A stretch of DNA of 63,481 nt, counting the filler, from Octopus bimaculoides (taxonomy: Eukaryota), in assembly GCF_001194135.2 (NCBI RefSeq). It is 5 parts of 4 records of this genome, joined end to end, with 100 filler letters (N's around TTAATTAATTAA, not from the genome) between each part and the next. Parts side by side here need not be neighbours in the genome. Positions count along the whole stretch, not along the records: positions 1 to 20,569 come from NC_068988.1; 4 more parts are not named here. One strand, 5' to 3'. Every line of letters begins with the position of its first letter. Within the stretch, counting starts at the first letter, position 1. A program made the position numbers and the translations under genes. The notes below the pieces were generated by a model. That model saw only the letters and a list, made by a program, of their open reading frames with translations, was not told where the DNA came from and made no database searches. This document shows, one piece after another, positions 346-33,482 of this stretch.

Positions 346-1237
346 TACATATATATTAGTAAAAACTTACGGTGGACACGTCTTCGTGGCGTTCCATTAT
401 AGATAAATAAATATAAGATACTTCAAGTACAGCACATCGCCAACGAGTGAAAATTACGTAGACACACGAGCGATAAGTACAGGACGAATTACCAAATATG
501 ATACGAGAACAGGACATCACCAACGGTTGAACAATACGTAAGCACATGAAAGAGAAGTACGGGACAAAATACCAAAAGAAGTGTAAACCCTCCTCATTTG
601 TCGACTGTTAATTACTCCCTATTTCGAGCTTTCAACGACAATATAGGAAAACGTTATAGAACAGCAGCACCCAGGAATATAAATATATAAGGTTTCTGGT
701 GAGTTAGAGCTTCGAACTAACAAACAACGACAGGATGGACGTACAAAGTTAGCAATTGACGAAGACAAACATTAAGGGACATTAGGCCAAGATGCATTGT
801 AATGAGTAACGCCCGGGAGAAATTTTGAATGGATATAGAATAAATACAAGGTCAGAAAATAATAGAGAGGAAGAAATGAGAGAAAAAAATGTCGGTAGGC
901 GAGGCAAAATGACGTCCAGGTGGATAAGATACACATGGCTAATACAAAGGTTTTCACCATGAACCTGGTTACGAGACTGAAAATATATAACATTCGAGTG
1001 CAGACCATTTTAACTCAGCGTGATATATTATCACGTTTCATTAGATTATGGAATTGAAAGCGGAGATAATAGTTCTGCCTGTTTGCAAAACTTTGAGAGG
1101 TAAATGAATTGTCGAATGCATTGAATATGCCACCGTTCGTGGCCACTTGTAATTGACGGCAATTATTTTTGGTTATTATTGGAAAAATAAGGATATTACA
1201 CAGACAGGGTGTTATGTAAGTATTTTATGTAACTTAC

Positions 1238-2230
1238 CGCAGCATGTAAACGAACACCATTCCAAAGTATCATGATCCAAAACATCAGATTGCTGGATGC
1301 TGCAATTGTTGTATAAGTGTATATATAAACATTAGTTTTAAATGACTCGTTTATAATTCCGTAAGTTGCAATACAAGAGCTGATAATGCTACCAAGAACG
1401 AGGTATCCGATAGTAAACCGTATTGATTCATTTACTAATCCCAGTATTGTACTCAGATTATCGTGTGCATTACATAAATCTGTAATCTCTCTAGGTTTCT
1501 TCGCCAAAATTGAAATGTGTGGTTGCTGTTCCTTTAGGCAGCGTTGAGCCTGAGTCGCCAGCTTGTCAAATTCATACTTAAGAATAAAACCGATTATGAA
1601 ATTTATATACGTATCAAGTAAATAAGACGTCAGTGACATGCAGTTAATTACAACTTGTATTGTTAGAAATGGAATGTTGAAAGTACTGTTGATTGGTACA
1701 GGATATGTTAAGAAAATCAGCATATCAGGGTTAAAAAGCGGCAAAACTTGCTCCATAAATATGTAAAGAGTTACCGGCACCAACATTCCTATAGATAGAG
1801 ATATATATGAGAATTTTATATTGCAGTTATAGAATTTTTTATCTTCTTCTTGAATTTCAATTTCGGCGAATGTTTCAATTAGTTGCTTGTCATCAGAATT
1901 CCTGATTAATTTCACAAAACAAAACAACAAAAAGGAACATTGGTAAAATATTATGCAAATATACCCAAACCTTTCATCAGTTTTATGAACTTTCAGTAGT
2001 ATAAAATTGATAATGTAACGAATGGGGTTTACTATTAAATATACATGATACAATATATATAAAGCTTGGTAAAATATTCTTATAAATTTGAGTGATTTTA
2101 GCGATGAACTATCCATAACAGATATCCTAAAATTATTAAATTTTCGGTAACATTCCAACATTTTTAAGAATTGTGTTCGAGTTCTTTTCATATTTTCTAT
2201 ATTTACGATATCTTCAGAATGCGTTTCCAT
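1238..2230 (-). CDS. Large first coding exon (331 aa, TM1-TM6) of a gustatory-receptor-like (GRL/7tm_7-type) chemoreceptor; the ORF reads through the donor to 1196
   Basis: Six hydrophobic segments; long loop before TM5 with LKYEFDKL...ITDLCNAHDNLSTILGLVNESI, like the GR H..L..(v)N motif; GTAAGT donor at 1237-1232 in phase 0 after LHAA; clear paralogue at 7885-8841. Confidence 0.8.
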
Positions 2231-3028
2231 ATCGGCAAATGGAATCGATGACAGGGAAGTGTGAAGTTTTAGTTTTTAAAGAATTTACTATTCCTTTTAC
2301 AAATGAAGATATATTTGCTTTATACTGAAGAAAACAGTAGCAACATACACTACTAATGAACGGCTCATATGATTTTAGATATTATTTCATCAAAATAACA
2401 ACCTATTACATGAAACAAATACGATCCAGCAGTATTCTTAATCACATACGCTTACATTTGCATTGATGTAAAGGATTTAAGCAGTCACAATTTTTAAATC
2501 TATCAAAGAAATTCGTGTAATATCTTCCTTACAGAAATCATATTACAAATTACGGAATATATGAACACTGCCACGGTACTCCTATGCATAACAAGTGTCA
2601 TCTAAATGTAACAAATCAACTGCTGTGTATATTTGCGAGACGAATTACCTGTCCCTACGCAACAATCCGAACCTAATTATTTTCCCGATATTCTCTAAAA
2701 GTGTTTGTATAATATATGAGTATACACATATCACACACACACACACGCAAGCACGCACGCGCGCGCTCACACCCCCTCATACATATACGTACATGTTTGT
2801 GTCCCTCTATACATATATGTTCATATACATACACACAGGCGCGTAGACACCCACACACACGCACACATATTAATACGGACTCATACATAGACATACATAG
2901 CTGTGTCCGTCTGTACATATATGTCCATAAACATGCACACATGCGCATATATATGTATGCATATGGATATATGTGTGTGTGTATACATATATGTATGTAT
3001 ATATATGTATATATATATATATATATAT

Positions 3029-3168
3029 AGTAGCTTGCTTACGAACCACACGGTCCCGTGTTCAGTCCTACTGCGTGGCACCCTGGGCAAGTGTCTTCTA
3101 CTATAGCCGCAGGCCGAACAAAGCTTTGTGAGTGGATTTGGTAGATGGAAACTGAAAGAAGCCCGTTG

Positions 3169-3170
<2 letters not shown>
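3029..3170 (+). mobile_element. SINE family B, 5' part
   Basis: tagcttgcttacgaaccacacggtcccgtgttcagtcc...gaaagaagcccg; similar copies at 6236, 36008, 38561, 53479, 57683, 59480. Confidence 0.8.
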
Positions 3171-3207
<37 letters not shown>

Positions 3208-3625
3208 NNNNNNNNNNNNNNNNNNNNNNNNNNNNNNNNNNNNNNNNNNNNNNNNNNNNNNNNNNNNNNNNNNNNNNNNNNNNNNNNNNNNNNNNNNNNN
3301 NNNNNNNNNNNNNNNNNNNNNNNNNNNNNNNNNNNNNNNNNNNNNNNNNNNNNNNNNNNNNNNNNNNNNNNNNNNNNNNNNNNNNNNNNNNNNNNNNNNN
3401 NNNNNNNNNNNNNNNNNNNNNNNNNNNNNNNNNNNNNNNNNNNNNNNNNNNNNNNNNNNNNNNNNNNNNNNNNNNNNNNNNNNNNNNNNNNNNNNNNNNN
3501 NNNNNNNNNNNNNNNNNNNNNNNNNNNNNNNNNNNNNNNNNNNNNNNNNNNNNNNNNNNNNNNNNNNNNNNNNNNNNNNNNNNNNNNNNNNNNNNNNNNN
3601 NNNNNNNNNNNNNNNNNNNNNNNNN

Positions 3626-3663
<38 letters not shown>

Positions 3664-3907
3664 CCACACTCACACATACTTGCTCATGTGTTTGTATGTT
3701 AGCGGGGCGATAATAATATTTCCTTAATTTATCCATTGTCACTCCTCACTCTGTTCAGAAAACAATTACACTATGCTACATAGATTTCAATTAGTTTCCC
3801 CTAATGGAAATAACTACTCGATATCTATTTGATGGTGTTGCATTAGCAATCAGAATTGTTTAATCTCTGTCGAAGGCATATTTATCTTATTAAATATATT
3901 AATGTTG

Positions 3908-4430
3908 TTAAGGTGGCAAGTTTGTAGAATCGTTAGCACTCTAGAAAAAAACAAAATGCTAGGTGGCGTCGTTTTTTCGTCTCTTTACGTTCTGAGTTCA
4001 AATTCCACTGATATTGATATTGTATTTCATTCATTCGGGGTCGATGAAATAAGGACCACCTGCGCCCTGCCGATTCGTTGTAATCGGCTTACACTTTCCC
4101 TGAAATTTCTGGTTTTGTGTCAAAATCTGAATGCATTCAGAAACGATAGAACCACTTCCTGGTATTGCATCAGTATCTGGTACTGATATTATTATTATTA
4201 TTATTATTATGGTTATTATTATTGTTGTTGTTGTTATTAAGGCGACCAGCTTGCAGAATCGCTAGCAAACCGAGAAAAATGCTTAGTGGTATTTCGGCCG
4301 TCATTACGGTCTGAGTTCAAATCCCGCCAAGCTTTACCTTATATTTCCTCCTTCCGGGGTCGATATAATAAGTACCAGCAGTGTACTGGGGTCGTCGTAA
4401 TATCAAGCCTTGTGCTCGTAATAGAAAGAG
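3908..4430 (+). mobile_element. Two decayed SINE family A copies separated by (TTA)n
   Basis: aagg(t/c)ggc...gaatcgttagca...ctgagttcaaat...ggggtcgat core, compared with 45101-45470. Confidence 0.75.
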
Positions 4431-6235
4431 AGGATTATTATCATTATTATTTCAAATCAGTATATTTATCAATTTACAATCAAATAAATCTACATAACTC
4501 TCGTAGACATTTTTGAAATTAGAAAATGATGATAGTGGGTATATATATNNNNNNNNNNNNNNNNNNNNNNNNNNNNNNNNNNNNNNNNNNNNNNNNNNNN
4601 NNNNNNNNNNNNNNNNNNNNNNNNNNNNNNNNNNNNNNNNNNNNNNNNNNNNNNNNNNNNNNNNNNNNNNNNNNNNNNNNNNNNNNNNNNNNNNNNNNNN
4701 NNNNNNNNNNNNNNNNNNNNNNNNNNNNNNNNNNNNNNNNNNNNNNNNNNNNNNNNNNNNNNNNNNNNNNNNNNNNNNNNNNNNNNNNNNNNNNNNNNNN
4801 NNNNNNNNNNNNNNNNNNNNNNNNNNNNNNNNNNNNNNNNNNNNNNNNNNNNNNNNNNNNNNNNNNNNNNNNNNNNNNNNNNNNNNNNNNNNNNNNNNNN
4901 NNNNNNNNNNNNNNNNNNNNNNNNNNNNNNNNNNNNNNNNNNNNNNNNNNNNNNNNNNNNNNNNNNNNNNNNNNNNNNNNNNNNNNNNNNNNNNNNNNNN
5001 NNNNNNNNNNNNNNNNNNNNNNNNNNNNNNNNNNNNNNNNNNNNNNNNNNNNNNNNNNNNNNNNNNNNNNNNNNNNNNNNNNNNNNNNNNNNNNNNNNNN
5101 NNNNNNNNNNNNNNNNNNNNNNNNNNNNNNNNNNNNNNNNNNNNNNNNNNNNNNNNNNNNNNNNNNNNNNNNNNNNNNNNNNNNNNNNNNNNNNNNNNNN
5201 NNNNNNNNNNNNNNNNNNNNNNNNNNNNNNNNNNNNNNNNNNNNNNNNNNNNNNNNNNNNNNNNNNNNNNNNNNNNNNNTATATATATATATATATATTT
5301 AAGATTACTATTCTTCCGGTCACAAAATCCCACCAGCAAAACTGGCACGAGCAAGGATTAGAAATGCTAATCCAAGCAGCCCTTGCCGATTTGGCAGAAA
5401 TTCCCGACTCTATTCTAATTGGAGAAGGCAACATTTTAAGGGACAATGTGAAGGTCGAATGATCTTACTCATATCGCCTTCTCCACATAAATTCACAATG
5501 ATAAGAGTCAACCATGGAACGGTGGAATTCTTTCTGTTATGAAAACAATTATAGAACGCGTTGTAGATACACTCCTTGTGCGCATGCACAACATCTTGGT
5601 TATTATGCAAACACATATGGAATACCTGTTGCTTCTTCATAGGTTTACACATCGAATCCATCATGTGTTTTGCTTCTTTTCGGAGTTAAAGGCATAGGAA
5701 TTTGAGCCATAGATTATCCATCTTTTAATTATATGTCAGGGAGAATTTATTGTACTACTTGACAAGAGCAAAATAATTATCAGCTTCCATCATTCGGAAA
5801 CCTGAGATGAATAACTTTTCTCTTCATCCTCTCCTGCATTGTTTCACGTGGCAATGAAATATTTTAAAATAGTCTACAGAGTTACATATTATTCCTTCAA
5901 CTAAGATAGATTGAAACATTGTCTCAATATCTGCAGAAGACGAAATTATGTCTCAACATTAAATAAGCTGTCTGTTCATTTAGTGTAGAGGAAATGATTG
6001 TTTTCACACTGCTGCTATATATTCTAAAGTTCTTCCAAATTATTCATTTGAGTATTGTGATATTCTTTCTATTAATTCTTTACTGATCTTCATTTTTTTC
6101 TTCTAACTCATTTTGCTTTAATATTATATTTCATTTGTTTTGTCATTTTACTGTTTTGTATATTAACGTGTGGTAGACATTTCGGATGTGAAAATAAAAT
6201 ATGCGTAAAATAAATGCTTAAGGATTACTCTTTCT

Positions 6236-6589
6236 TTTACTCTTTTACTTTGTTTCAGTCATTTGACTGTGGCCATGCTGGAGCACCACCTTTAGTCGAG
6301 CAAATCGACCCCAGGACTTATTCTTTGTAAGCCTAGTACTTATTCTATCGGTCTCTTTTGCCGAACCGCTAAGTTACGGGGACGTAAACACACCAGCATC
6401 GGTTGTCAAGCGATGTTGGGGACAAACAAAGACACACAAACACACATATATACATACATATATACGACGGGCTTCTTTCAGTTTCCGTCTAACAAATCCA
6501 CTCACAAGGCTTTGGTCGGCCCGAGGCTATAGTAGAAGACACTTGCCCAAGGTGCCACGCAGTGGGACTGAACCCGGAACCATGTGGTT
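6236..6589 (-). mobile_element. SINE family B, near full length, 5'-truncated
   Basis: Reverse complement of the 38561-38810 and 3029-3170 type sequence. Confidence 0.8.
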
Positions 6590-6843
6590 CCCTCTTTCTA
6601 CAGTTTATCTAATGCCGTCATAAGCAGCTTCCTCTTGGGAAATTACAGTTTGTTTTACAAGTGTTCCAAAGATATTTTTTTCTGGTAATACATAAATTAA
6701 AACGTGTTTTGAAGGGAAAACGAGTGCAATAAAGATGATGTTGACGATGATAAGGATAATGAAAGTAACAAGAATAATGAGCTAAAAGTAGGAAATATAT
6801 TGTTGCGTCTTGGGAAAGTCTAATATTATTATAATATAATAAT

Positions 6844-7226
6844 AACAAGAGCACTCAGAGAGCGCAAATCTCCGCTAAAGCAACACCAACGTCTTCTCAA
6901 CGATTAGCCGGAGATGATTTTTAAAATGAGAATATCTGAAATAAACTCGACTGCTCTCACAAACGAGAGTACCAATAATGAACCCTACCGCTCTCAAAAA
7001 TTAAAAAAAAAAACAACAACAGGAAAAATAATCCAGAATCCTTGTCCGTTACAAGATCGATCCCAAAATCTAATCAGTTCGTGCCAGTCACGAGGCCAAA
7101 TATCTATGAAAATTTCATCCGAATCCATTCAACGGTTCTTGAAAAATGTTGTCCAAGGACAAACAAACAAAAGCAAACAAACGTGACTGAAATTAATACC
7201 TCCGCCTTCGCTAAGGCGGAGGCAAT
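6844..7226. mobile_element. Non-autonomous Helentron/HINE-like element
   Basis: Starts aacaagagcactcagagagcgcaaa-ctccgc; ends in a perfect 10-bp stem-loop CCTCCGCCTT-CGCT-AAGGCGGAGG (7199-7222); short (CAAA)n before the hairpin. Confidence 0.55.
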
Positions 7227-7884
7227 ATTAATAGAATATTGTTATATTTATACTAATGAAGCGACAAGGAAAAACTAAATACATCAATAATGAAAACAAT
7301 CAGAAATAAAAATAAATACTTGACAATTATAAGATTGGTGCCAATAATAATAATGGTAATTGTTATCACACAAAATTGAATTTTTGACAGAATTAGTAAT
7401 ATTTTCTGTTATTTCTATTAGATTTGATGTCTTCATTTTTATCTTTTTTTAATGCTACAATTGATATACTCGATTTATAATAAAAATTCCACTGTACATC
7501 ACAACCCGTTCTCCATTTCTGTACGCTGTAAGTTGTCATCACCACACAAGTTAAGCAAACGTGGCCGGTTCAGAAATTGTGAAATAGAGAGTAAGAAAAA
7601 GAGGGAGGGTGAAAATGGAAGTCAACGAGAAGGACAAGTGTTGAACTCAGGCATTAGTGGTACTCTATTGAATTTGTGTGGATGAGAGGCAAGGCTAATC
7701 TCCACATGACATGAACAAAGAGCGAAGAGAACCGGAACAAACGACAAAAGATCATTCTGTGTAGCTGACACGTTAAAAAGTCGATCGTTTAAACACCTAT
7801 AATGGTGTTATTTCTAACATAGCAATACAAATATAAGGCAAATTGGACAGCTTAGAGTTATGTAATAAAATTTATACTACATAC

Positions 7885-8841
7885 CGATCTGTTTAATTGA
7901 ATTCCGCACCAAAGCATTGCAGTCCACGATGACAGACATCCTGTAACCACCACAGCTACATAAATGTTTATAAACATGTTAGTTTTGAAAGAATCATTTA
8001 TTATTCCATACGTAGCAATACAGCAGCTGATGACACTACCGAACACGAGAAATCCTGAAATAAACTGCAGGGAATCATTTACTAATCTCACTATTAAACA
8101 CAGAGCATCATGGGTGTTACATATGTCTGTAATCTCTCCATGATTCGTAATAATATCCGACTTAGCTGATTGCTTTTCAGTTACATAAATCTGTGCTTCA
8201 TTCGCCACTTTGTTAAAATGACATATAAGAGTAACTGCGATTAGAAGATATATATACACATCAGTTAATATGGATAAAGCTGATACAGAATTAAATACAA
8301 TCTGCATTACTAAAAATGGGATGATGTAAGTGTAAGTATTTGGAACAGGATATTCGTAAAAGATCAACAAATCATAACTCAACAGCGGTATAATGAAATC
8401 CAGAGTTATACTTCCAATAATAATTAGACATATTAATATATATACTGACTTATATATTATAGGGTTGTTGTACCAGATTCCATCTTCATCCTCAGTTTTA
8501 AGTTTAGCAAACTTTTCAATTAGCTCCTTGTCTCTAGATTTTCTGAACAGTTTTATAAATGGAGAGAGAGAAAGGAATATACGAAAAAATATTATGTAAA
8601 TATATAAAAACATTTTATCGTTTTCGATCGTTTTCAGTTGTATTAAGGAAACAATGTGACGAATAGGGTTTAGAATCAGATATATGTAAAACAGTGCACA
8701 GAAAACTTGTAGAAATATTGCTTTAAGTTTGTTTGATTTCATCAACGATATATCGATTATTGATTTGCTAAAACTATTAATTTTTCGATAAATTTCGAGA
8801 GTTTTCAAGAACTGAGTTTCATTTGTGTTCACGGTTTCCAT
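7885..8841 (-). CDS. Large first coding exon (319 aa, TM1-TM6) of a second GRL/7tm_7-type chemoreceptor paralogue; the ORF reads through the donor to 7858
   Basis: Colinear with 1238-2230, sharing TQFLK.LE.YRK, NPIR, DK.LIE.FA, YPVP, IPFL, EITD.CN.HD.L, CIATYGIIN.SFKTN and LW.G; GTATGT donor at 7884-7879 in phase 0 at the homologous codon. Confidence 0.8.
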
Positions 8842-10880
8842 AATTTCGTCTTTTTCACAACTGGTTGATTCTCTTCAAAAATATACACAGACCATGCAAG
8901 ATTTCTTTCTCTCCGAGAGTGCAAGTGCTTGGTTATTTAAACTTGTGTGATACGCAATTACTTGTCGGACGAAGTCGTAACAGACACGTCGCACATATAT
9001 TAGTGACATAAGAATGGACCAATAGCAGCTTATACAAAATGCGGCAAGTAATTTTTCTTCATTATCTTTGTGGGTATATACATGTATTCATGTATGTATA
9101 TCTACCATTGTATTTCTCGACGCATCAAATCAGGTTTAATCAGGTTCTTAATGGATAATGTATTTACAATAACAGCGATGCGTTAACATCTATCAAATGA
9201 TCTTACTTTAGTCATTCATTGGAAATTTGTGTGTGTTTGTCATTTTATCCCAATTATTGGTTATACAGCAGTACGATGGTTAACTTCCTCTATCCACATA
9301 CTTAACTTCCTACATACATACATAATACATACATACATGCACAAACCATACACACACTCACAAAGACAAGCACAGAGGCACACACACTCACGCACACACG
9401 CACACACATTTACTACATATGTGGAAAATCGGTGTTGTTTGTTTGTAGCGTTGTTAGCTAACTCCTCCTATATCGTTTAATTGATTTTGATGAAACTTGA
9501 CACGTGAGTAGAACACATGTCTGAAAACCTCGTGACATACTTAGATTGTTGAAAACAATCCATAATAGGGCCCCTGGAAGGGACCTTTATATCTACTTCA
9601 TATAACTAATTTTTTTAAATACCCAAGGGAAATAACCCATAGCATCTGCACAATAATCTTTTTAAAGAATCAAGGGAAATAATCCAATTCATTGTTTATG
9701 TTCGATTACTTTGAATATTGATTTTTTGTGTATCCAGTTTCTAATTTTTGCAGACAATATCACTTTATTTGGGCTCCTCCAATGGATCCATCTATCTACT
9801 ACATATTACTAATATTTTATTTAAACAACCCAAGGGAAATAACCCATACGACCTGCAGTTTTTAGTGAAACGATCAATATTTGATTCTCACGATCAGCCG
9901 ACCTGATTCTGCATTTCACTACTCACAGTTTTGAACTGCTAAACATTATTATTATCGCACTTCCTTCATTTGAACCTTAAACCTTAAAGACTTCATTCAT
10001 ACATTTCTATACATACATACTTTTTTGAATGCCCATTCTGAATTTGTACAGTTACACTTTTTTCCATGACAGTAGATAAATTTTGTATTCCACAACGTAT
10101 TTGTAGTGGCTTCATGCAGGCATAGCGTGGATTCGATCCTCAATAGCCAAATTTCACTTAACACTTCAACAGCGCTTTCCTCACGGTAAAACAATAGTTT
10201 TTCTGTGAATGACAGCAGTTATACATTTCCCAGATGCCTTCGCTAAGCAGAATAATATCTTTGCTGCTTGACCCTTCTAACCTCTTCTAGGCCACCACTA
10301 GCTGGAATGGAGATAACAGACCTCCAACGAAATCATTCGTTCTCAACAATATGACTATCTTTCTGGCTGCTTTTCCATACTTATAAAAACAAGAACTCCG
10401 TAAGCTAAAGGCAGTTACTGAGAGCGACCATCAGTGAGTGTGAACGTTATTATTTCACTTTCTTCAAACACTTCTTTCACATATTTATATAACCTCTCTC
10501 ACCAGCCTCCGACAATCTCTCCCTCCTCCAGCTGACAGTTTTTTGTACTTTTTCGTGACGGAAAATACACGTTTTTGTGGCAGTTATAACAATAATGCTT
10601 TCTTATATCAGAGTAATAAGGCGTTTCAATAGAACATTTTTACCCCCGGGTATTATCGGGTACATCAGCTAATATATTTGTATATATACATACTTATATA
10701 TATATATATATATNNNNNNNNNNNNNNNNNNNNNNNNNNNNNNNNNNNNNNNNNNNNNNNNNNNNNNNNNNNNNNNNNNNNNNNNNNNNNNNNNNNNNNN
10801 NNNNNNNNNNNNNNNNNNNNNNNNNNNNNTATATATACACACACACACACACACACACAGAGGGGGGTACACATACATAC

Positions 10881-10911
<31 letters not shown>

Positions 10912-10984
10912 ATATCGTCGGTTGCGACGACAAGTGTTTCAGTTGATCAGATCAACGGAACAGCCTGCTCGCGAAATCAATATG

Positions 10985-11405
10985 CAAAGTGGTGGCAGGT
11001 AGATATGCTGTGCAATACATGTGGAAGATCCTGGAAGGAATTGTCCCAAGCTTTGGCATCGAGAGTTACGCTAACACTAGAACAGGGCTTTATTGCTCAG
11101 TGCCAAAACTTCCAACTTTGCCATCAAAATACAGGACAAGATATTGCAATAGCCTGGGCTTTAAAGGCCCACGGTTCTTCAATATTGTTTCGAAGGACCT
11201 GATTGACCTACATGGGGTGGATGTAGATGCCTTCAAAACAAAACTAGATCACTTACAGTCAAGAGTCCCAGATGAACCAACTTCACAGCAGGAAGTGCCA
11301 ACGAGGGCAGCAAAGTCACACTCCCTCATGTACCAAATATCAAGTTCTAAAAGGAACTAGGGAAGTAAAACTTATATAGCAACACCAAATGGTGGTGTCC
11401 CAGGA
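10985..11405 (+). mobile_element. CR1/L2-group LINE ORF2 C-terminus and 3' end
   Basis: RY...YMWKILEGIVP...KGPRFFN...FKTKLDH...VPDEP...RAAKSHSL, a typical post-RT tail of invertebrate CR1-like LINEs. Confidence 0.75.
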
Positions 11406-11711: not shown

Positions 11712-12215
11712 NNNNNNNNNNNNNNNNNNNNNNNNNNNNNNNNNNNNNNNNNNNNNNNNNNNNNNNNNNNNNNNNNNNNNNNNNNNNNNNNNNNNNNNNN
11801 NNNNNNNNNNNNNNNNNNNNNNNNNNNNNNNNNNNNNNNNNNNNNNNNNNNNNNNNNNNNNNNNNNNNNNNNNNNNNNNNNNNNNNNNNNNNNNNNNNNN
11901 NNNNNNNNNNNNNNNNNNNNNNNNNNNNNNNNNNNNNNNNNNNNNNNNNNNNNNNNNNNNNNNNNNNNNNNNNNNNNNNNNNNNNNNNNNNNNNNNNNNN
12001 NNNNNNNNNNNNNNNNNNNNNNNNNNNNNNNNNNNNNNNNNNNNNNNNNNNNNNNNNNNNNNNNNNNNNNNNNNNNNNNNNNNNNNNNNNNNNNNNNNNN
12101 NNNNNNNNNNNNNNNNNNNNNNNNNNNNNNNNNNNNNNNNNNNNNNNNNNNNNNNNNNNNNNNNNNNNNNNNNNNNNNNNNNNNNNNNNNNNNNNNNNNN
12201 NNNNNNNNNNNNNNN

Positions 12216-13735: not shown

Positions 13736-14227
13736 TCCTCTAAATTTTTTCCTTTCTGACTTTTTAAGATTTTTTTGTATTCACAAATGTGTAAACTACA
13801 TACTAAAGATAACAGATCCTCTTATTGAATTCTAATTTCATTGCAGTGCGATGTGTTATCACAGAAATTCTTGTTGTCTGAGTGAAATTCTGAAATAAGA
13901 AAATGGCCCTAACGATGTTATGGTGTCTTGTATAAGTCCTGAGCTTATATATATATATATATATATATATATNNNNNNNNNNNNNNNNNNNNNNNNNNNN
14001 NNNNNNNNNNNNNNNNNNNNNNNNNNNNNNNNNNNNNNNNNNNNNNNNNNNNNNNNNNNNNNNNNNNNNNNNNNNNNNNNNNNNNNNNNNNNNNNNNNNN
14101 NNNNNNNNNNNNNNNNNNNNNNNNNNNNNNNNNNNNNNNNNNNNNNNNNNNNNNNNNNNNNNNNNNNNNNNNNNNNNNNNNNNNNNNNNNNNNNNNNNNN
14201 NNNNNNNNNNNNNNNNNNNNNNNNNNN

Positions 14228-18169: not shown

Positions 18170-19470
18170 GAAAGATATGGAAGACTGTTTAGCATACCAT
18201 GTTTGTGATTTTATTTTCGTAAATCCTGGATGTCGATTGCCTTAGCCCGCTCTATTCCATTATCAATTAATGGTGATAGGTACTGTCTTTCGAATAGAAT
18301 TTCCTTTAATTCTTGGAGTCTTTTGTCCAGCGTTTCATAATTTGAGACAACTGAATAAATTATTCTCGCTAGATTTAAAGGAATGTTTGTCTTTGTGTGC
18401 TTAGGGTGGTTGGAAATGAATAGAAGGTATTGTTTGGAATCAGTCGGTTTCAATGTTTGTGTCTTTTTATGTTTAAAGCGTCTAGAAATGTGAGTTGGTT
18501 TTGACTAAATTCCATTGTGAATTGGATATGACTGGTAATGCTGTCAATTAGGTTTTTGAATTCATTGAGTTGGTCGAATGCGTGAGATCATAGAATGAGA
18601 CAATCATCCAAGTAGTGCTTCCATTTCTCTAACTGACACTTGTAGAAATTCAGGTTGTATTTTAATTTGAATTGAATTATTCAGGTAGATCACAACTAGA
18701 TTAGCGTAAATTGCAGCAACGTTTGTGCCCACTGCAGTCCCTTATTCTCTTATCATCAAAGTTATCATCAAAAATGTTATCATCAAAGGTAAAAACGTTG
18801 TTTTGCAAAATGAATGTATGTCGCTCGATGATAAAATCTTTTTCTATCCGGGATCTCATTGGGGTATTTTTCCAGCCGGAATCTTATTGCCTCCAGTCCG
18901 TATTGGTGTGGAATCGAAGTGAACAGCTTTATCACACCAAAGGAGACGATGAAAATGTCCTTGTTGTCGTGTTTAGGGAGGTGGTTTCGGAGATCCAGAT
19001 CGTCTCTTACAATACTTGCTATGTGTTTGAGAATTGGTTTTAGCAGTATGTCTATAAAGTTGCTTTGTCCGTGTATTTCACAATTTGGGCCTGCCACAAT
19101 TGGTCTTAGTTTGAAGACAGTGGGATGTGGTACATTGATGCAGGTTGAGGTGGAACATTTGCAGGCTTTGTTAAATATTTTGCTCTTGTTGGTTTTTAGG
19201 AAGTTCGCAGCGGTAACTGGTTTCGTATTCAAAATTCGTTAAATAATCGCATTCCATTTTTTAAATGTTTTATTGATGTTAGCAAATAAGGTCGTTTAAT
19301 TTGGTCATCGTTTCTGACCATTGGTATTTATCTACTCTTTCATAGTATGTAGTATCTTGTTTGGTATCCATAATTACAACAACACTCCCCTTATCCACGT
19401 CTTTGTCGTGTTTGGTATCCATAATTACAACAACACTCCCCTTATCCACTTCTTTCATTATGATATCGTT
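18170..19470 (-). mobile_element. Penelope-like retroelement RT remnant (frameshifted)
   Basis: VDKGSVVVIMDTK (tandemly duplicated at ~19350-19450), LRPIVAGPNC, SFGVIKLFTSIPHQYGLEAI, KPTDSKQYL..SNHPKHTKTNIP. Confidence 0.85.
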
Positions 19471-22372: not shown

Positions 22373-23653
22373 TATAATAAGGTACAAAACCATAATTTTG
22401 TCAGGGCTTGGTACTGGTTATGTTGAGCACAGTACTTGGTTGATACTTGTTTTATTGATCCCAGAAGAACAAAAGGCAAAATGGATCTAGTGGGATGGAT
22501 TTCAATTCAGAAGGTAAAGGGACATAACTAAATACAAAAAGGTATTTAATCCCTCACTCTATCGATTCTACAACTTCCCACTACCCTTTGACAACATATA
22601 ATAAATGTGATGGTGCCATGTTAAAAATACCGGTGCTGGTGCCCCATAGAAAGCATCCTGTACACTGTGTGAAGTGGATTAGGAAGGGCATCTAGTCATA
22701 GAAACCATGCCAGAACAGACAATGAGGCTTGGTATAGCTCTGTCAAACCAGCCAACCCATGACAGCATGGAAATAATGATGATGTAAAGAGCTCAAGTCT
22801 AGAATATCCTTCTAGTATTTAGCTTAAAGTCTTAGAGACTTGATATCCAATCCAATCCTATCCTATCCAGATAATCATATCTTCCTTTTGTTGAACAGCT
22901 CAAGGTTAGCTCTGATGATGCAAACCTATGGTGAAAGAGATTCCAGCTGTGAGTATCGAGCTTTTTTTCCAATGAGCAGAGAACCCAAGAACACATTATC
23001 CAACATGTTCTTTTTATAAAATGTTTAAGTTGTGATCCAGAGAGATTTGGTTGCTATTTCTAGCAGGTCAAGGGACCACGCAGAGCACTCTTACTACCCA
23101 CTATGCTTGTAATCATTTATATTTATAACACTGTTTGATAGCATTAAGTACTAATGATATAAGAATCAGCGTGAAAATGGATCAATGCTTGGAAGGAGTT
23201 GGTGACTGAGGTGGTTGCTTAACATGTTTAAAAAAAAAAAGGAGGGCTGTTTTATCTTTTTTTGGTGGGGTAATACAGTCCAGAAAATCTATGTCTACGG
23301 TTAGGGGCTGATGTGCACCTTTCCGCAGTTGTGAATGTCCTGAATGGAGCCAACCAACAGCTGTTCAGGGTTGAAAAAAAAAATGTCATTTATAGCAACT
23401 GGGGCTATGAGAAATATATCATCTGATGAATTAAAATGTAAAGAAATGAAAATAAACTACTATCTGTAGCAATTACACATGCTCTAGTGAACATAATGTT
23501 CACTTCTCTATGTTAATATGGCTGCTGTCTGCTGTGGCGAGATAGATTCTTATAAACAATGTGTGAGCATGGGAAAAAGTAAATGTCAAATGAAACACTG
23601 GTGATTTTGCGCATGCATGCAAGTGTGTATGTGTGTTTGGGTGTGTGTGTTTA

Positions 23654-23725
<72 letters not shown>

Positions 23726-24104
23726 CTGTGCCTGTTAAAAAAGTAGTTCATATATATAGTAATGATGACATATTTAAATATATTTATTAAAAGTTCAATG
23801 TCTGTTGCTACCACCTAAAATGGTGAGTTGTTCCCACTCTGCAGTGCCTATTTACAGCTTCTTGACTAGGGTCATCTGAAAACTGTCTTCTAGCCATAGG
23901 AGATACATATTATTAAAAAAAAAACACGTGTCTCAACACTGGCTGTCCACTAAGGCACCTGGTTATCTGCATGATACAATAATTGAAAAAAATACTTGAA
24001 AAAATAACCTTACAATAATTGAAAAACAAAAAAACTTTTTCAATTCTAAAAATCATAAATAAGGAATAAATCAAAAATTCAAAGTATTCAGAATTTATTC
24101 AAAG

Positions 24105-24378
24105 CAGTGGTTCCCAAACTTTTTCAGGCTGCTGCCCCCTTGACACCCAGGCCGTATTCCTAGCATCCAACTAACCATCATAAATATAGATTTCTTTCTG
24201 AAGCAAATTCAAAGCAAATAAGACTTAACCTAATGAACCCATTATTTTGTTGCTCTTTACAGGAATCACCCCTTTTGACTACCCCATTATTGCCCTAATT
24301 TTCTTCAATGCCACTTGGAACTTCCCCCCCCACCACCACCACCACAGGGGGTAATACCACCCACTTTGGGAACCACTG
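24105..24378. mobile_element. hAT-type MITE
   Basis: TIR CAGTGGTTCCCAAA / TTTGGGAACCACTG; 8-bp TSD ATTCAAAG / ATTTAAAG. Confidence 0.85.
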
Positions 24379-26884: not shown

Positions 26885-27095
26885 GGTAGTGAGCTGGCAG
26901 AATTCTTAGCATGCCGGGCGAAATGCTTAGCAGTATTCAGTCTGCTGTTACATTTTGAGTTCAAATTCCACTGAGGCCAACTTTGCCTTTCATCCTTTCA
27001 GGGTCAATAAATTAAGTACCAGTTGAGTACTGGACTGATCTAATTGATTGGGCCTCTCCCACCAAGTTTCAGGCCTTGTGCCTATAATAGAAAGG
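26883..27095 (+). mobile_element. SINE family A copy, heavily CpG-decayed
   Basis: Aligns to the 45101 copy with most CG changed to TG/CA. Confidence 0.8.
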
Positions 27096-27109
27096 ATTAT
27101 TATTACTAT

Positions 27110-28030
27110 TAATAGTAATATGGTCATTTGGCAAGAATGGATGAGGATAGCTGTGTGAAAAAGTGCCACAGCCTAGCGGTTGAGGGTACCTGTGGAAGAG
27201 GTAGAACCAGGATGACCTGGGATGAGGTGGTGAAGCACGACCTTTGGACATTAGGCCTCACCGAGGCAATGACTAGTGACTGAGACCTTTGGAAATATGC
27301 TGTGCATGAGAAGACCCAGAAAGACAAGTGAGACCATAACCTGTGGCCTTTACCAGGGTGTAGCCAGCCCACTTATGCATACCTTTCCTTCTTTGGACAC
27401 AAATCCCTGATTGCGAAGACCTGTTGAGGCAAGTGAAATCAAAATTGAAATCGAACCAAATTCGATGACTGGCACCCATGCCAACCTTCCTTCATTGGAC
27501 ACTAACTCTGCTTGCAAAGACCTGTTGGGGCAAGTGAAATCGTAACTAAACCAAATTCGATGACTGGCACCCGTGCCAGTGGAGTGCTAACAGCACCATC
27601 CGAGCAGGGTCACTGCCAGAGCAGCTGTCTGGCTTCCGTGCCAGTGGCACGTAAAATGCACTATTTGAGCGTGATCGTTACCAGTGTCGCCTTACTGGCA
27701 CTTGTGCTGGTGACGTGTGAACAAAACATTCGAGCGAGGTCATTACTAGCGCCACTCAACTGACTCCTGTGCTGGTGGCACGTAAAAACACCATTTGAGC
27801 GTGGCCGTTGCCAGTACCTCCAGACTGGCCCTCGTGCTGGTGGCACGTAAAAGCACCCACTACACTCTCGGAGTGGTTGGCATTAGGAAGGGCATCTAGC
27901 TGTAGAAACTCTGCCAGATCAGATTGGAGCCTGGTGCAGCCATCTGGTTCGCCAGTCCTCAGTCAAATCGTCCAACCCATGCTAGCATGGAAAGCGGACG
28001 TTAAACGATGATGATTATGATGATGATGAA
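27110..28030 (+). mobile_element. RTE-clade LINE 3' end (ORF C-terminus, long 3' UTR, (GAT)n tail)
   Basis: GRGRTRMTWDEVVKHDLWTLGLTEAMTSD*DLWKYAV matches the RTE RGRP..TW...v..Dl..lgl....a.DR..W motif; UTR has internal repeats of gtggcacgtaaaa. Confidence 0.82.
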
Positions 28031-29975: not shown

Positions 29976-32900
29976 ATAATGTACTTCCATTTTAGTGGAA
30001 ATACATATACTGTACTTCCATTTTAACACCACCACCCAGTCCATTGGTTACCTTTAGCAGAATTCACTCTGTTGGAAGCATTCAGAGTATAACTGCTGTT
30101 CTTTCTCTATCCATGTGTTTTTCCTGCTGAAAAGGTTGGACATCAACAGCATCATTCTCATGCTGCAAGGATGAGACTACAGCATGAGATTAACGCAAAG
30201 ACCTGTGAGGGTCATGTCGACTGCACACAAAACTTAGACCATCATTGAAGAACAAATCTGTTTTCACATTAAATAACAAGCCAAAAGCTATGTAGTAGTC
30301 TAAGTTTGAATAAATGACAGAGACTTAGTCTTGCCCAAGTGATTTTGTTTTAACCTCAAAATGCCACACAGTGTGACCTAACCCAAGACCCCAAAATTGG
30401 GAAGCAAGCTTCTTAACCATATTCTGTTCCTAAAAAAAACTTGAAGAGAGGAATCTGAAGAAATTTTTAAATTATATAGAAAACAATATAGTGTGACTGA
30501 CCCTGTATTGTTGTAAGTAGATGAAAATTTTAGTTTTTACACTGTGAACAGTGATTTTAATCTCATGTGACTAATACAAACCAGAAACATCTTATATTAC
30601 TATAAACTGGTTCTTATATAGGCAGAAGGCCTAAAATTTGGGGAAGGAGGCCAGTCAATTGCATCAACCCCAGTGCTTGACTATACTTCATTTTATGTCC
30701 CCAAAAGGATGGAAGGCAGTCGACATTGGTGGGATTTGAACTTGGAATGTAAAGAACCAGAAGAAATGCTGCTCAGCATTTTTTGCCAACACGCTAACAA
30801 TTCTGCTAGCCTGCCACCCAAATATATTACCACAAATTAAAAACAGAAATATTATATATTGCCATAAATTAAACTAAAATAGAAAAAAAAATATTGTTAG
30901 TTTCTAACTATCATGTTTATTTATCAATCTTGAAAGGAAAGAAGAAATTTTAAAGAGAAAACCAAATAACTGAAAAACGATTGAAAATGACAAAATTCTT
31001 CAAAAGCAACTTATTTATTCTATCATAACAACTAATTAACAAGAAGGGATTCAAGGAGACTAATGGTCTGGAAGCGAGATACAGCATTCATTAAAGTACA
31101 TCAAAATAGGAGTTTGACTAGACATGAACGACTATTTAAATAAGTCTCATTTACACCCCTCTCTTTCTCTCTTCTGTTTCTCCATCAGTCAAGAATTTCA
31201 TGAAATGTTGTCTAATACAAGCAATAAACAACCAAAGGTTTCTTATCATCCTCAACCTACTCAATACTGATTCTATTTGTTTTTATCAGTGTTTTGTGCA
31301 TTTATTTATCTGCTCAAACATCATTACCAAACTGTCACTAAATGAACTACTTTTTAACAGATAGTCATCACTAACACAGCACTGCTACCAGTTTATATAG
31401 TCTAATTTAAAATGAACCGAGTTAAAACCTGGATGTTATCAAAGCCGGAGTGAACTGCTGGAAAAGAAGTGATGTCTCAACATCTGATAGCACATGATTT
31501 GTCTGCTGATAAAACCAGCAGCATCTGTCAAAAACTCATCAAAATGACAAATATTTCAAAAGATGAAATAGCCTGCACATTAGTGTTTGTGTATGTAAGT
31601 TTGTTTTGTGTGGGATCATTTTTTTTTTACTGCCTTCAGAAAAGCAGAATAAAAAGTCAGGGTTAGGTAACTATTTCAGGTATCAGGACATCTTTGTGGC
31701 TGATCCTACAGATAACAATCCTGCTATAGATCAAATACCAGAATCACAGTTCAAAACATCAAAACGTGATATCAGCACAACGCATCTTTACAAAATATTT
31801 AAGGATATTCTATGCACACCCACACACTTTTTCACATGTTTTCTATGGAATAATGAAAAAGCAATTTCTGCAACTTTGGAAAATTTTTTAAAACAGTTTG
31901 AAAGAAAAAAATTTACACCTTCTTGCAAATATAGCGATTCTTTGAATAAGGTTGCTCAAACTGCTCGTGTGGTAACCAAATCTCCCTCAACAATCTGTGT
32001 ATTTGAAGAACAGCACTAAAATGACAATCACAGGACAAAATGCCTATTGTGAAATGATGCTTGCTAATCAGTATAAATACTAAGAGAACAAATAAATCAT
32101 TGATGATATCTCCTGCTGATTGTTTAGCAAAAGGGCATTCCAGGCACACGCATGGTAGGGTGGTCAAGAAGCTCACTTTGTAAACGCATGGCTTCAGGTT
32201 CAGTCCCAATGCACAGCACCATGGGCAAGTGTCTTCTACTATAGCTTAAGAGGAGGGCAGGGGTTATCAACCAATGTCTTATGAGTGAAATGAAAACTGT
32301 GAGGTAACCTTGTGTGCGCATGAGAGAGAGAGAGAGAGAGAGAGAGGGGGGTTGTCCCTGCCATCCCACTGCTTGACAACTTGTGTTGGTTTATGTCCCT
32401 GTAACTTAGCAGCTCAGCAAAAGAGACAACAAAATAAGAACCAGACTTAAAAAGTAAGTACTGGGGTCCCCAACATGGTTGGAGTTCAATGACTGAAACA
32501 AGGAAAAATAAAGGCTAACCTTTCTCTTCTGAGGGTCAAAAGGCCAACAACCAGCAGACAGAGAACTGTCCATATTTGTTTTCCACAATTGGAAGGCATC
32601 ATCATCATTTAACGTCCATTTTTCATGCTGGCATGGGTTGGACGGTTTGACAAACTGATGAACTGAAGGGCTGTTCAGGCTCCAGTCTGATTTGGCATGG
32701 TTTCTATGGCTGGATGCCCTTCCTAATGCCAGCCACTTTACAGAGTATGCTGGGTGCTTTTACGCAGCACAGGTATGGGTGCTTTTTACGTGCATATACA
32801 AATTTTTAGATGTATATACAAATTTACAAGACAGAGTCAGAATAAAATCAATGTTTACAAAATCATTTTAATGAACTTTAAATAGCCATGAAAACACAGA

Positions 32901-33482
32901 TGTGGTTGTTTGGTTAGGAAGATTGCTTCCCAACCCCATGGTTCCAGGTTCAACACCACTGCATGGCACTTTAGGTAAATGTCTTCTATTATAGCTCCAG
33001 GTTGCCCAAAGCCTCATGAATGGATTTATGTACTTGGACATGTGATTTACATGTAAATGGATCTGACTGACAAACTGAAAAGCTTGTATGTGTGCGTGTG
33101 AATATGTACATGCACAAACACACACATATAGTAGTACTTTTATATTTGGGGATGGTCTTTTTTTTTTCCTTTGCCAATAAACACATGCACTGTTTATTTG
33201 ATCTTCACTTTAGGTTTAGTATTAGTTTATTTGTCATTGAAGAGGTCACAGAATGTATGACAAAAAGAACTCTAACAAATAAACTAATATTAACAATAAA
33301 GCTAAAGTGAAGATCAAATAAACAGTGCATGTGTTTATTGACAAAAAAAAAAAAAGGTAACCATCTCCAGATATAAGAATATCTGTTTCAACAACACACA
33401 ATATCACATCAAGAAGATTGCAAAACAAATACATGAAAGTACATATTAATATATGAGTGTTGTAGTTTGCTTGAAGCATTGT

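What the first reader, a model, noticed from the sequence alone, without database searches (positions are those of the whole stretch)
1238..8841. Tandem pair of divergent gustatory-receptor-like (7TM ion-channel) chemoreceptor genes in a probable cephalopod
Seen: two colinear 319-331 aa exons, roughly 40% identical by eye, each with six TM segments, a long TM4-TM5 loop carrying EITD.CN.HD.L..I..LVN.S, and a phase-0 donor right after TM6. Known: insect GR/OR and invertebrate GRL proteins (PF08395 7tm_7 group) have this H..L...vN loop, conserved C-terminal phase-0 introns and a TM7 TY.....QF motif. Cephalopod chemosensation is usually discussed in terms of nAChR-derived chemotactile receptors, IRs and GPCRs. 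Inference: this is part of a lineage-expanded GRL family, a possibly undescribed octopus chemosensory system. Both frames are still open despite deep divergence, which suggests purifying selection.
Basis: partly seen in the sequence, partly recalled or inferred. Interest (0 to 1): 0.88.

Follow-up and report, generated by a model that had tools for sequence, protein, structure and literature searches.

The report
Octopus taste-receptor-like gene with interchangeable front exons
The two reading frames are real and belong to the insect taste/smell receptor channel family, but they are most likely two of at least five interchangeable first exons of one Octopus bimaculoides gene, all joined to the same three small final exons, the same layout as the fly gene Gr39a.

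Summary

**What is in the window.** It is Octopus bimaculoides chromosome DNA. Two minus-strand ORFs, 7885-8841 (319 aa) and 1238-2230 (331 aa), are 43% identical. Each has its own ATG, encodes helices S0-S6, and ends in a phase-0 GT donor. Both assembly gaps lie between the ORFs, not in them.

**Family.** The full protein is a gustatory-receptor-like (GRL) 7TM ion channel. Isoform X1 scores 31.6 bits on Pfam 7tm_7 (cut-off 26.6). An AlphaFold model (pLDDT 86.8) has only insect OR/Orco/GR structures as its top 23 Foldseek matches. No GPCR matches.

**Not two genes.** Neither ORF encodes TM7. In the 69-kb O. bimaculoides locus and the gapless 107-kb O. sinensis locus, 5 and 8 such cassettes lie in tandem upstream of three small phase-0 exons that encode TM7. 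In each species one of these cassettes carries a stop. NCBI models join the orthologues of both window cassettes to the same tail.

**Novelty and limits.** This is the Drosophila Gr39a/Gr28b layout. GRLs in molluscs are known. This layout in a cephalopod, and most of the cassettes, appear undescribed or unannotated. Expression and ligands were not tested here.

The parts
7885..8841 (-). It is an alternative first coding exon of LOC106880719: 319 aa with its own ATG at 8841, encoding helices S0 to S6.
   Evidence: It is 100% identical to residues 1-319 of XP_052825891/2 (P0008, P0001). The AlphaFold helices are listed.
7883..7884 (-). Phase-0 GT splice donor of cassette C1 (TCG|GTATGT).
   Evidence: In the NCBI models this donor is joined to constant exon E2, which lies outside the window at L001 56117.
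1238..2230 (-). It is a second alternative first coding exon: 331 aa with its own ATG at 2230, encoding S0 to S6. No O. bimaculoides protein matching it was returned by either database search.
   Evidence: It is 43% identical to C1. Its O. sinensis orthologue (79% aa identity over the whole cassette) is spliced to the shared tail in LOC118764607 isoforms X3 and X4. No 100% match was found in the protein database.
1236..1237 (-). Phase-0 GT splice donor of cassette C2 (GCG|GTAAGT).
   Evidence: It sits at the position homologous to the donors of all other cassettes in both species.
8842..8981 (-). Proximal upstream block of C1. It is a putative 5'UTR or promoter and shares a recognisable block with the upstream regions of the other cassettes.
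   Evidence: Alignment A4 of the 140 nt upstream of all 13 cassettes. Function is inferred only.
2231..2370 (-). Proximal upstream block of C2, a putative own 5'UTR or promoter.
   Evidence: An in-frame stop lies upstream of the ATG. Function is inferred only.
2371..7882 (.). Spacer between the cassettes, which is intronic for C1 transcripts. It holds both assembly gaps (3208-3625 and 4549-5279, each flanked by (TA)n) and a dispersed repeat at 6236-6589.
   Evidence: A profile built from tail peptides finds no cassette and no TM7 exon here.

Best explanation
**Gene layout.** The finding covers the first two variable exons of one multi-cassette gustatory-receptor-like gene, O. bimaculoides LOC106880719. 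Each cassette is about 320 aa, has its own start codon and probably its own promoter, and encodes the N-terminal re-entrant helix plus transmembrane helices S1-S6. Every cassette ends in a phase-0 donor. One cassette per transcript is spliced, over any downstream cassettes, to three small phase-0 constant exons 37-50 kb downstream and outside the window. Those exons encode the end of S6, S7a, a beta-hairpin and the helix S7b (TYILVVIQT).

**Products.** The result is a set of 7TM ion-channel subunits with different S1-S6 bodies, where the ligand pocket lies in the solved insect receptors, and an identical C-terminal pore and assembly module.

**Likely function.** By analogy with the solved insect GR and OR channels, they most likely form tetrameric ligand-gated cation channels. 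The shared S7 could allow isoforms to co-assemble. A chemosensory role is the most likely function.

**Shown:** family membership, fold, exon layout, splice signals, conservation in a second species, and maintenance of the open frames.

**Inferred:** use of every cassette, separate promoters, channel activity and a chemosensory role.
For: **Family and fold.**
- P0008 (isoform X1) scores 31.6 bits on PF08395 against a cut-off of 26.6, aligned over 41-388 to profile positions 33-367 of 370.
- Remote relatives of the family profile in Sepia, Haliotis, Littorina and Nucella score 54-82 bits on 7tm_7 and also hit Trehalose_recp.
- A family profile searched against PDB sequences hits only Gr64a (E = 1e-5), Gr43a and MhOR5.
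- The AlphaFold model has pLDDT 86.8 and pTM 0.86. It shows long S4-S6 helices, S7a, a hairpin and S7b.
- The top 23 Foldseek PDB matches are all insect OR/Orco/GR structures (TM-score 0.47-0.67). The next match has E = 0.09.
- There are seven hydrophobic segments. K+R counts are 22 on the predicted inside against 4 outside, which fits N-in, C-out.

**Layout.**
- Five cassettes and one forward-strand constant-exon set lie in L001.
- Eight cassettes and a single constant set lie in the gapless L002.
- All cassettes have GT donors at the homologous phase-0 position. All constant exons have a polypyrimidine tract, an AG acceptor and phase 0.
- O. sinensis isoforms X2 (c1) and X3/X4 (c2) carry the identical tail.
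- The neighbouring gene LOC118764606 has 2 cassettes plus 3 constant exons.

**Maintenance.**
- P(no stop under neutral substitution) is <= 0.01 per cassette.
- Cassettes have 0-3 gap positions between the species, against 22-99 in the flanks.

Against: - No transcript data were available here. Cassette-to-tail joins rest on NCBI gene models, for C1 in both species and for c2 in O. sinensis only, and those two c2 models are N-terminally truncated.
- The C2 isoform alone gives no Pfam hit, and isoform X2 scores 25.1 bits, below the cut-off.
- Orthologue dN/dS for C2 (1.31) and C3 (0.8-1.55) is about 1. Nucleotide divergence in cassettes is about the same as in the flanks. This is compatible with relaxed constraint.
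- One cassette (C4 / c7) carries a stop in each species.
- O. bimaculoides has a second, inverted copy of the constant exons, about 95% identical, whose meaning is unresolved.
- GRLs outside insects include non-chemosensory cases (own knowledge: C. elegans LITE-1, Nematostella Grl1), so a chemosensory role is not assured.
Confidence: 0.8

Rival explanations
1. One reading: two independent tandem GRL genes, each with its own downstream TM7 exon or exons.
For: - Each ORF has its own ATG, with an in-frame stop upstream.
- The spacer between the ORFs contains two assembly gaps, which could in principle hide small exons.
Against: - tblastn and a tail-peptide HMM find no TM7-like exon between or right after the cassettes in the window.
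- None lies between any of the 8 cassettes in the gapless O. sinensis locus, which is colinear with the window across both gaps.
- The orthologues of both cassettes are modelled with the identical 57-aa tail in one gene.
Confidence: 0.05
2. Only C1 is a working first exon. C2 and the other cassettes are decaying duplicated exons inside its first intron and are never used productively.
For: - O. bimaculoides RefSeq models use only C1.
- dN/dS for C2 and C3 orthologue pairs is about 1 or higher. Substitution divergence in cassettes is about that of the flanks.
- C4 / c7 carry stops.
- The C2 and C3 isoforms give no single-sequence Pfam hit.
Against: - Open frames of 318-331 codons are retained in both species, with P <= 0.01 each under neutral substitution and 1.4e-10 jointly.
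- The cassettes have no frameshifting indels, while the flanks have 22-99 gap positions per about 800 nt.
- Consensus donors and start codons are conserved in every cassette.
- O. sinensis isoforms X3 and X4 use c2.
- Orthologues of C2 and C3 stay open in more distant octopod assemblies at 61-68% identity.
- Paralogue dN/dS is 0.34-0.51.
- A dN/dS near 1 is common in chemoreceptor ligand-binding regions (own knowledge).
Confidence: 0.12
3. The layout is as in the best explanation, but the proteins are not environmental chemoreceptors. They might instead act as light or H2O2 sensors like C. elegans LITE-1/GUR-3, as developmental signalling proteins like Nematostella Grl1, or as internal metabolite sensors.
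For: - No expression or ligand data exist here.
- The family is small, with 26 representative hits, unlike typical large chemoreceptor expansions.
- Non-insect GRLs with non-chemosensory roles are known (own knowledge).
- The reviews read here discuss octopus chemosensation in terms of chemotactile receptors, IRs and GPCRs, without GRLs.
Against: - Multiple fast-evolving cassettes differ most in S3 and S6. These helices line the ligand pocket in the solved insect OR MhOR5 (own knowledge).
- Exon birth and death between two Octopus species is the pattern typical of environmental chemoreceptors such as Gr39a (PMC2204066).
Confidence: 0.25

Closest known systems
Drosophila Gr39a (also Gr28b and Gr23a): alternatively spliced gustatory receptor loci
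   Same: - Several large tandem 5' exons each encode six TMs, followed by three small shared exons that encode TM7 and the C-terminus. Any one large exon is spliced to the small ones (PMC2204066).
- Both loci show exon duplication, loss and pseudo-exons between related species.
- Both belong to the same protein family (PF08395).
   Different: - The host is a cephalopod mollusc, not an insect, and protein identity to insect GRs and ORs is only about 10-15%.
- The locus is far larger: 49 kb in O. bimaculoides and 87 kb in O. sinensis.
- It holds up to 8 cassettes.
- The TM7 motif is TYxxxxxQT rather than QF.
- Use of each cassette is not yet shown by transcripts.
- Whether the layout is inherited or convergent is unknown.
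Invertebrate gustatory-receptor-like (GRL) proteins of the 7TM ion channel superfamily, reported in Mollusca, Annelida, Cnidaria and other phyla
   Same: - Pfam 7tm_7 membership and the Orco/GR fold.
- Three phase-0 introns near the C-terminus.
- Relatives found here in Haliotis, Littorina, Nucella and Sepia.
- GRLs in Mollusca are already reported (PMC7746228).
   Different: - I found no description of the cephalopod members.
- The octopus clade is very divergent: the octopus-only profile does not reach the PDB GR sequences directly.
- It diversifies by cassette exons rather than by whole-gene copies.
Solved insect receptor channels: Orco (6C70), MhOR5 (7LIC), Gr64a (8JME), Gr43a and BmGr9
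   Same: - The predicted fold matches over nearly its full length, with TM-scores of 0.47-0.67.
- Shared features are S0, long S4-S6 helices, S7a, a beta-hairpin and S7b.
   Different: Tetramer formation, ion conduction and ligand gating are untested for the octopus protein.
Clustered protocadherin and UGT1A loci: variable first exons with constant 3' exons
   Same: The gene logic is the same. A tandem array of variable first exons, each likely to have its own promoter, is spliced to shared constant exons.
   Different: - The protein family is unrelated.
- Promoter choice is not demonstrated here.
- There are far fewer cassettes.

Membership tests
GR/GRL chemoreceptors (Pfam PF08395 7tm_7; 7TM ion channel superfamily) | The sequence matches the family HMM above the curated cut-off. 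| tested here: met
   P0008 (C1 plus the full tail) scores 31.6 bits against a cut-off of 26.6, aligned end to end. Isoform X2 scores 25.1 bits and the C5 construct 24.3 bits, both just below. The C2 and C3 constructs give no hit on their own but are clear paralogues.
GR/GRL chemoreceptors (Pfam PF08395 7tm_7; 7TM ion channel superfamily) | The fold is that of Orco and the GRs: S0-S7, long S4-S6 helices, and S7 split into S7a, a hairpin and S7b. | tested here: met
   The AlphaFold model has pLDDT 86.8. The top 23 Foldseek PDB matches are all insect OR/Orco/GR structures with probability 1.00 and TM-score 0.47-0.67.
GR/GRL chemoreceptors (Pfam PF08395 7tm_7; 7TM ion channel superfamily) | Seven TM segments with the N-terminus inside and the C-terminus outside, the opposite of GPCRs. 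| tested here: inconclusive
   A hydropathy scan gives 7 segments. K+R counts are 22 in the predicted cytoplasmic loops against 4 outside, which fits N-in, C-out. This is a prediction only; no dedicated topology predictor or experiment was used.
GR/GRL chemoreceptors (Pfam PF08395 7tm_7; 7TM ion channel superfamily) | TM7 carries the motif TYhhhhhQF. | tested here: inconclusive
   The octopus sequence is TYILVVIQT: T, Y and Q are kept and F is replaced by T. The other cephalopod sequences found (Sepia, O. sinensis LOC118764606 and P0026, whose source was not looked up) also have QT. The Haliotis, Littorina and Nucella relatives have QF.
GR/GRL chemoreceptors (Pfam PF08395 7tm_7; 7TM ion channel superfamily) | Conserved phase-0 introns near the C-terminus. 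| tested here: inconclusive
   Three phase-0 introns are present: after S6, after ...EVIAK and before MLGSFITY. Whether their positions are homologous to the insect introns was not aligned here. That the insect introns are conserved is from my own knowledge (Robertson 2003 and 2015).
GR/GRL chemoreceptors (Pfam PF08395 7tm_7; 7TM ion channel superfamily) | Forms a tetrameric ligand-gated cation channel. | not testable with these tools
   This needs heterologous expression, electrophysiology and cryo-EM.
Multi-cassette GR loci (Gr39a / Gr28b type) | Several tandem large 5' exons, each with its own ATG and encoding TM1-6. | tested here: met
   There are 5 cassettes in L001 and 8 in L002, one in each species carrying a stop. 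Two of them lie in the window.
Multi-cassette GR loci (Gr39a / Gr28b type) | One shared set of small 3' exons encoding TM7, downstream of all cassettes, with compatible splice phases. | tested here: met
   The gapless L002 has a single set, at 91120, 95070 and 97153. All junctions are phase 0 with consensus signals. L001 has an extra inverted copy that remains unresolved.
Multi-cassette GR loci (Gr39a / Gr28b type) | Transcripts join each cassette separately to the shared exons. | not testable with these tools
   Only NCBI gene models are available: C1 in both species and c2 in O. sinensis. No RNA-seq reads were accessible.
   No GPCR family appears in the Pfam results. The best GPCR in Foldseek is at rank 36, with E = 0.94 and TM-score 0.12.
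Cephalopod chemotactile receptors (derived from nicotinic acetylcholine receptors) | Cys-loop receptor (Neur_chan) domains. | tested here: not met
   No such Pfam hit and no such PDB or Foldseek match was found.

The most novel reading that the evidence does not exclude
The layout of variable first exons plus three phase-0 constant exons may be an ancestral, or repeatedly favoured, way for GR/GRL genes to diversify. In that case octopus would use promoter choice among cassettes across about three neighbouring genes, giving roughly 12-15 isoforms. Sensory cells would then carry distinct ligand-binding bodies on a common pore and assembly module. This would be an overlooked ionotropic chemoreceptor system alongside the chemotactile receptors.
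Probability: 0.2. Interest if true: 0.75.

Novelty: new member of a known kind. Interest (0 to 1): 0.5.

Why it matters
**A possible further receptor class.** The reviews read here discuss cephalopod chemosensation in terms of nAChR-derived chemotactile receptors, IRs and GPCRs. This locus shows that octopuses also keep a small, fast-evolving cluster of insect-type 7TM ion-channel receptors. If these are expressed in suckers, lips or the olfactory organ, they would be a further receptor class to test.

**A shared gene layout across phyla.** The layout is the same as Drosophila Gr39a/Gr28b, in a different phylum. That poses a clear question: is cassette splicing onto a constant TM7 module ancestral in this family, or convergent? 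It also gives a natural experiment on which half of the protein sets ligand specificity.

**An annotation gap.** Most cassettes, including the lower one in this window, appear to be missing from current annotation. Gene-family counts for cephalopod GRLs are therefore underestimates.

Tried and rejected
**Searches and models that failed or gave nothing.**
- Pfam on the two bare ORFs gave no hit. The TM7 tail is needed.
- A word-index homologue search with the 57-aa tail alone found nothing, so one search was wasted.
- Looking up isoform X2 proteins on contigs failed, because only the longest isoform is indexed. Isoform X1 identifiers from the cluster listing worked.
- The first AlphaFold run, with 7 sequences, gave pLDDT 38 and was discarded. 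A 31-sequence alignment fixed this.
- The octopus-only profile against PDB sequences gave only insignificant ferritin hits. The link to solved GRs needs the intermediate molluscan sequences or the structural comparison.

**Ideas rejected.**
- TM7 exons hidden between the cassettes: tblastn and a tail HMM on six-frame translations find none.
- GPCR or Cys-loop receptor identity: rejected.

**Dead ends.**
- Other window ORFs (10989-11360, 18211-19242 and others) have no Pfam hit and look like retroelement remnants.
- An all-against-all BLAST of the cassette upstream regions was swamped by microsatellites. The short proximal alignment was more useful but only suggestive.
- One literature query was too broad and gave nothing useful.

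Full report
**1. The observation**

The window has two long minus-strand ORFs, 1196-2230 and 7858-8841. Trimmed to ATG and splice donor they are 2230->1238 (331 aa, here called C2) and 8841->7885 (319 aa, C1).

- They are 43% identical over 328 aa, E = 3e-87.
- Both end at consensus phase-0 donors, TCG|GTATGT and GCG|GTAAGT.

I tested the flagged assembly gaps first.

- Gaps 3208-3625 and 4549-5279 lie in the spacer between the two ORFs, not in them.
- Both are bracketed by (TA)n.
- The window stays colinear with the gapless Octopus sinensis assembly across both gaps.

The window is 100% identical to O. bimaculoides chromosome CM046608.1. C1 is residues 1-319 of XP_052825891/2, LOC106880719.

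**2. Family**

*Sequence evidence.*

- The bare ORFs give no Pfam hit.
- The full-length isoform X1 (P0008, 390 aa) matches PF08395 7tm_7 end to end at 31.6 bits, above the curated 26.6.
- Isoform X2 scores 25.1 bits.
- A profile of the octopus sequences, searched against 1.84 billion representative proteins, found only 26 hits.
- The distant hits come from O. sinensis LOC118764606, an O. bimaculoides protein that UniProt already names 'Gustatory receptor', Sepia pharaonis, Haliotis, Littorina and Nucella.
- All of these pass the 7tm_7 cut-off, and the strongest four score 54-82 bits. Most also match Trehalose_recp.
- A profile that includes them hits only insect Gr64a, Gr43a and MhOR5 among all PDB sequences.
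- The octopus-only profile does not reach those sequences.

*Structural evidence.*

- AlphaFold with 7 sequences failed, with pLDDT 38.
- With 31 sequences it gave pLDDT 86.8 and pTM 0.86. The model shows the characteristic long S4-S6 helices, S7a, a short beta-hairpin and S7b.
- Foldseek against the PDB returned 23 insect OR, Orco and GR chains first, with probability 1.00 and TM-score 0.47-0.67.
- The matches then drop sharply to E >= 0.09. The first GPCR is at rank 36 with TM-score 0.12.
- Hydropathy gives seven segments. The K+R bias is 22 in predicted cytoplasmic loops against 4 outside, which fits N-in, C-out.

**3. Gene structure: where the interpretation changes**

Neither window ORF encodes TM7, and the tail of P0001 is not in the window.

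- In O. sinensis, isoform X2 (the orthologue of C1) and isoforms X3 and X4 (the orthologue of C2) belong to one gene, LOC118764607. They end in the identical 57-aa tail.
- I fetched the whole O. bimaculoides gene as L001, 69 kb. The window is L001 1-18841 reversed.
- L001 holds five cassettes on one strand: C1 at 10001, C2 at 16612, C3 at 25005, C4 at about 32084 (one in-frame stop) and C5 at 37212.
- Three constant exons follow at 56117-56185, 57231-57320 and 59218-59274.
- The gapless O. sinensis locus L002 (107 kb) has eight cassettes. Seven are open. The C4 orthologue has a stop at a different position.
- L002 has exactly one set of constant exons downstream. A tail-peptide HMM run over all six reading frames confirms there is no other set.
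- Every cassette has its own ATG at the homologous position and a GTAAGT, GTATGT, GTGAGT or GTAAGC donor in phase 0.
- Every constant exon has a polypyrimidine tract, an AG acceptor and phase 0.
- An internal CAG acceptor 42 nt into E2 explains the difference between isoforms X1 and X2.
- The next gene along, LOC118764606 (L003), has two cassettes and three constant exons.
- LOC118764608 also has isoforms, with its own near-identical tail.

[quoted passage not shown] That paper also reports exon gain, loss and pseudo-exons between species.

**4. Selection**

| Comparison | Result |
|---|---|
| Paralogous cassettes, dN/dS | 0.34-0.51 (dS 0.77-1.14) |
| Orthologue C1, dN/dS | 0.42 |
| Orthologue C2, dN/dS | 1.31 |
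| Orthologue C3, dN/dS | 0.8-1.55 |
| Orthologue C5, dN/dS | 0.66 |
| Orthologue C4 (stop-bearing), dN/dS | 0.63 |
| Substitution divergence, cassettes | 0.075-0.119 |
| Substitution divergence, flanks | 0.085-0.134 |
| Gap positions, cassettes | 0-3 |
| Gap positions, flanks | 22-99 |

- Random substitution at the observed density leaves a frame open in at most 1% of trials per cassette, and 1.4e-10 jointly.
- Orthologues of C1, C2 and C3 are open in more distant octopod assemblies at 61-72% identity.
- So the frames and splice signals are under selection, while the amino-acid sequence evolves fast.
- Among paralogues, S3 and S6 are the most divergent (0.33-0.34 mean pairwise identity) and S5 the least (0.54).
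- In MhOR5 the ligand pocket is lined by S2, S3, S4 and S6 (own knowledge). This pattern is therefore compatible with ligand-pocket diversification, but it does not prove it.

**5. Mechanism proposed**

- One cassette per transcript, probably chosen by its own promoter, is spliced over the downstream cassettes to E2-E4.
- The upstream 140 nt of the cassettes share a recognisable block, so the duplication unit included the 5' flank.
- The products are subunits with variable S0-S6 and a constant S7a, hairpin and S7b.
- In the solved insect channels S7b lines the pore, and S7a together with the cytoplasmic extensions of S4-S6 forms the tetramer anchor (own knowledge of the Orco and GR structures).
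- A constant S7 would therefore keep pore and assembly properties fixed while ligand recognition varies. It could also let isoforms co-assemble.
- Channel activity, tetramer formation, expression site and ligands are all inferred.

**6. Comparison with what is known, and novelty**

- GRLs are documented across Protostomia, including Mollusca (PMC7746228).
- The NCBI models carry the 7tm_7 domain, and a UniProt O. bimaculoides paralogue is already named 'Gustatory receptor'.
- Cassette splicing is known in insect GRs.
- Three things appear to be undescribed: the presence and layout of this cluster in cephalopods, its turnover between two Octopus species, and most of the cassettes as coding sequence.
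- C2 of the window has no exact match in the protein database.
- The searches turned up no paper on any of these, and the reviews read discuss octopus chemosensation without GRLs.
- I file it as a new member of a known kind, of moderate interest.

**7. Caveats**

- No transcript reads were available.
- The O. sinensis c2 isoforms are N-terminally truncated models.
- O. bimaculoides has a roughly 95%-identical inverted copy of the constant-exon block at L001 49942-53058. It is absent from the O. sinensis locus sequence fetched here and could be a real duplication or mis-oriented contigs.
- Large gaps in L001 may hide further C3-like cassettes, of which O. sinensis has four.

Noticed in passing
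L001 49942-53058 (minus strand) compared with L001 55915-59875 (plus strand); outside the window: O. bimaculoides carries a second, inverted copy of the three constant exons and their flanks. It is about 95% identical to the forward copy, lies about 3 kb upstream of it, and spans contig joins. The gapless O. sinensis locus fetched here has only one copy. It could be a real inverted duplication or mis-oriented contigs.
   Followed up: partly
L001 about 32084-33034 (cassette C4) and L002 72465-73418 (c7): One cassette has a single in-frame stop in each species, at different positions (ELI*TF in one, NY*FK in the other). Its conserved motifs are also degraded (QIIRIYN, LEN). It is a pseudo-exon retained in both species, like the pseudo-exons reported at Gr39a.
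   Followed up: partly
L002 28335, 47247, 55762 and 67022; minus-strand fragments at L002 65551-65168 and 54039-53664: O. sinensis has four C3-type cassettes that are 89-94% identical to each other, plus two broken inverted fragments. O. bimaculoides shows one C3. This is either recent exon duplication or copies hidden in the O. bimaculoides assembly gaps (L001 18842-21355, 22776-24591, 27265-31458).
   Followed up: partly
L003 (O. sinensis CM016866.1 83050339-83098122): 10001-11014, 23267-24277, 27093-27164, 30160-30258, 37704-37781: The neighbouring GRL gene LOC118764606 has the same design: two cassettes 43% identical to each other, the second not used in the only model retrieved (P0024), plus three constant exons. 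LOC118764608 also has isoforms with its own near-identical tail. The layout is therefore a property of the whole cluster.
   Followed up: partly
window 3180-3207, 3626-3655, 4540-4548, 5280-5298; also the gaps at 10714-10829, 11712-12215 and 13973-14227: The two gaps inside the finding are flanked on both sides by (TA)n microsatellites. The three gaps further upstream are flanked mostly by (TA)n, with (TG)n/(AC)n runs next to some of them. These repeats are the likely cause of the assembly breaks.
   Followed up: partly
window 6236-6589; window 10989-11360 (+); window 18211-19242 (-): A dispersed repeat is 83% identical to L001 35827-36163. Several ORFs of 80-150 aa look like retroelement remnants but have no Pfam hit.
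   Followed up: partly
L001 56117-56185 (constant exon E2): An internal CAG acceptor 42 nt into E2 removes 14 aa (VHSITQSIHFMQFQ) at the end of S6 and gives isoform X2. Only the longer isoform X1 passes the Pfam cut-off, so X1 is probably the canonical product.
   Followed up: partly
TM7 of the cephalopod and gastropod relatives (P0008, P0024, P0026, P0031 compared with P0028, P0033, P0034): Four sequences (O. bimaculoides LOC106880719, O. sinensis LOC118764606, Sepia, and P0026 of unknown source) have TYxxxxxQT, where the gastropod GRLs and insect GRs have TYxxxxxQF. This may be a lineage-specific change at the extracellular end of the pore helix.
   Followed up: no
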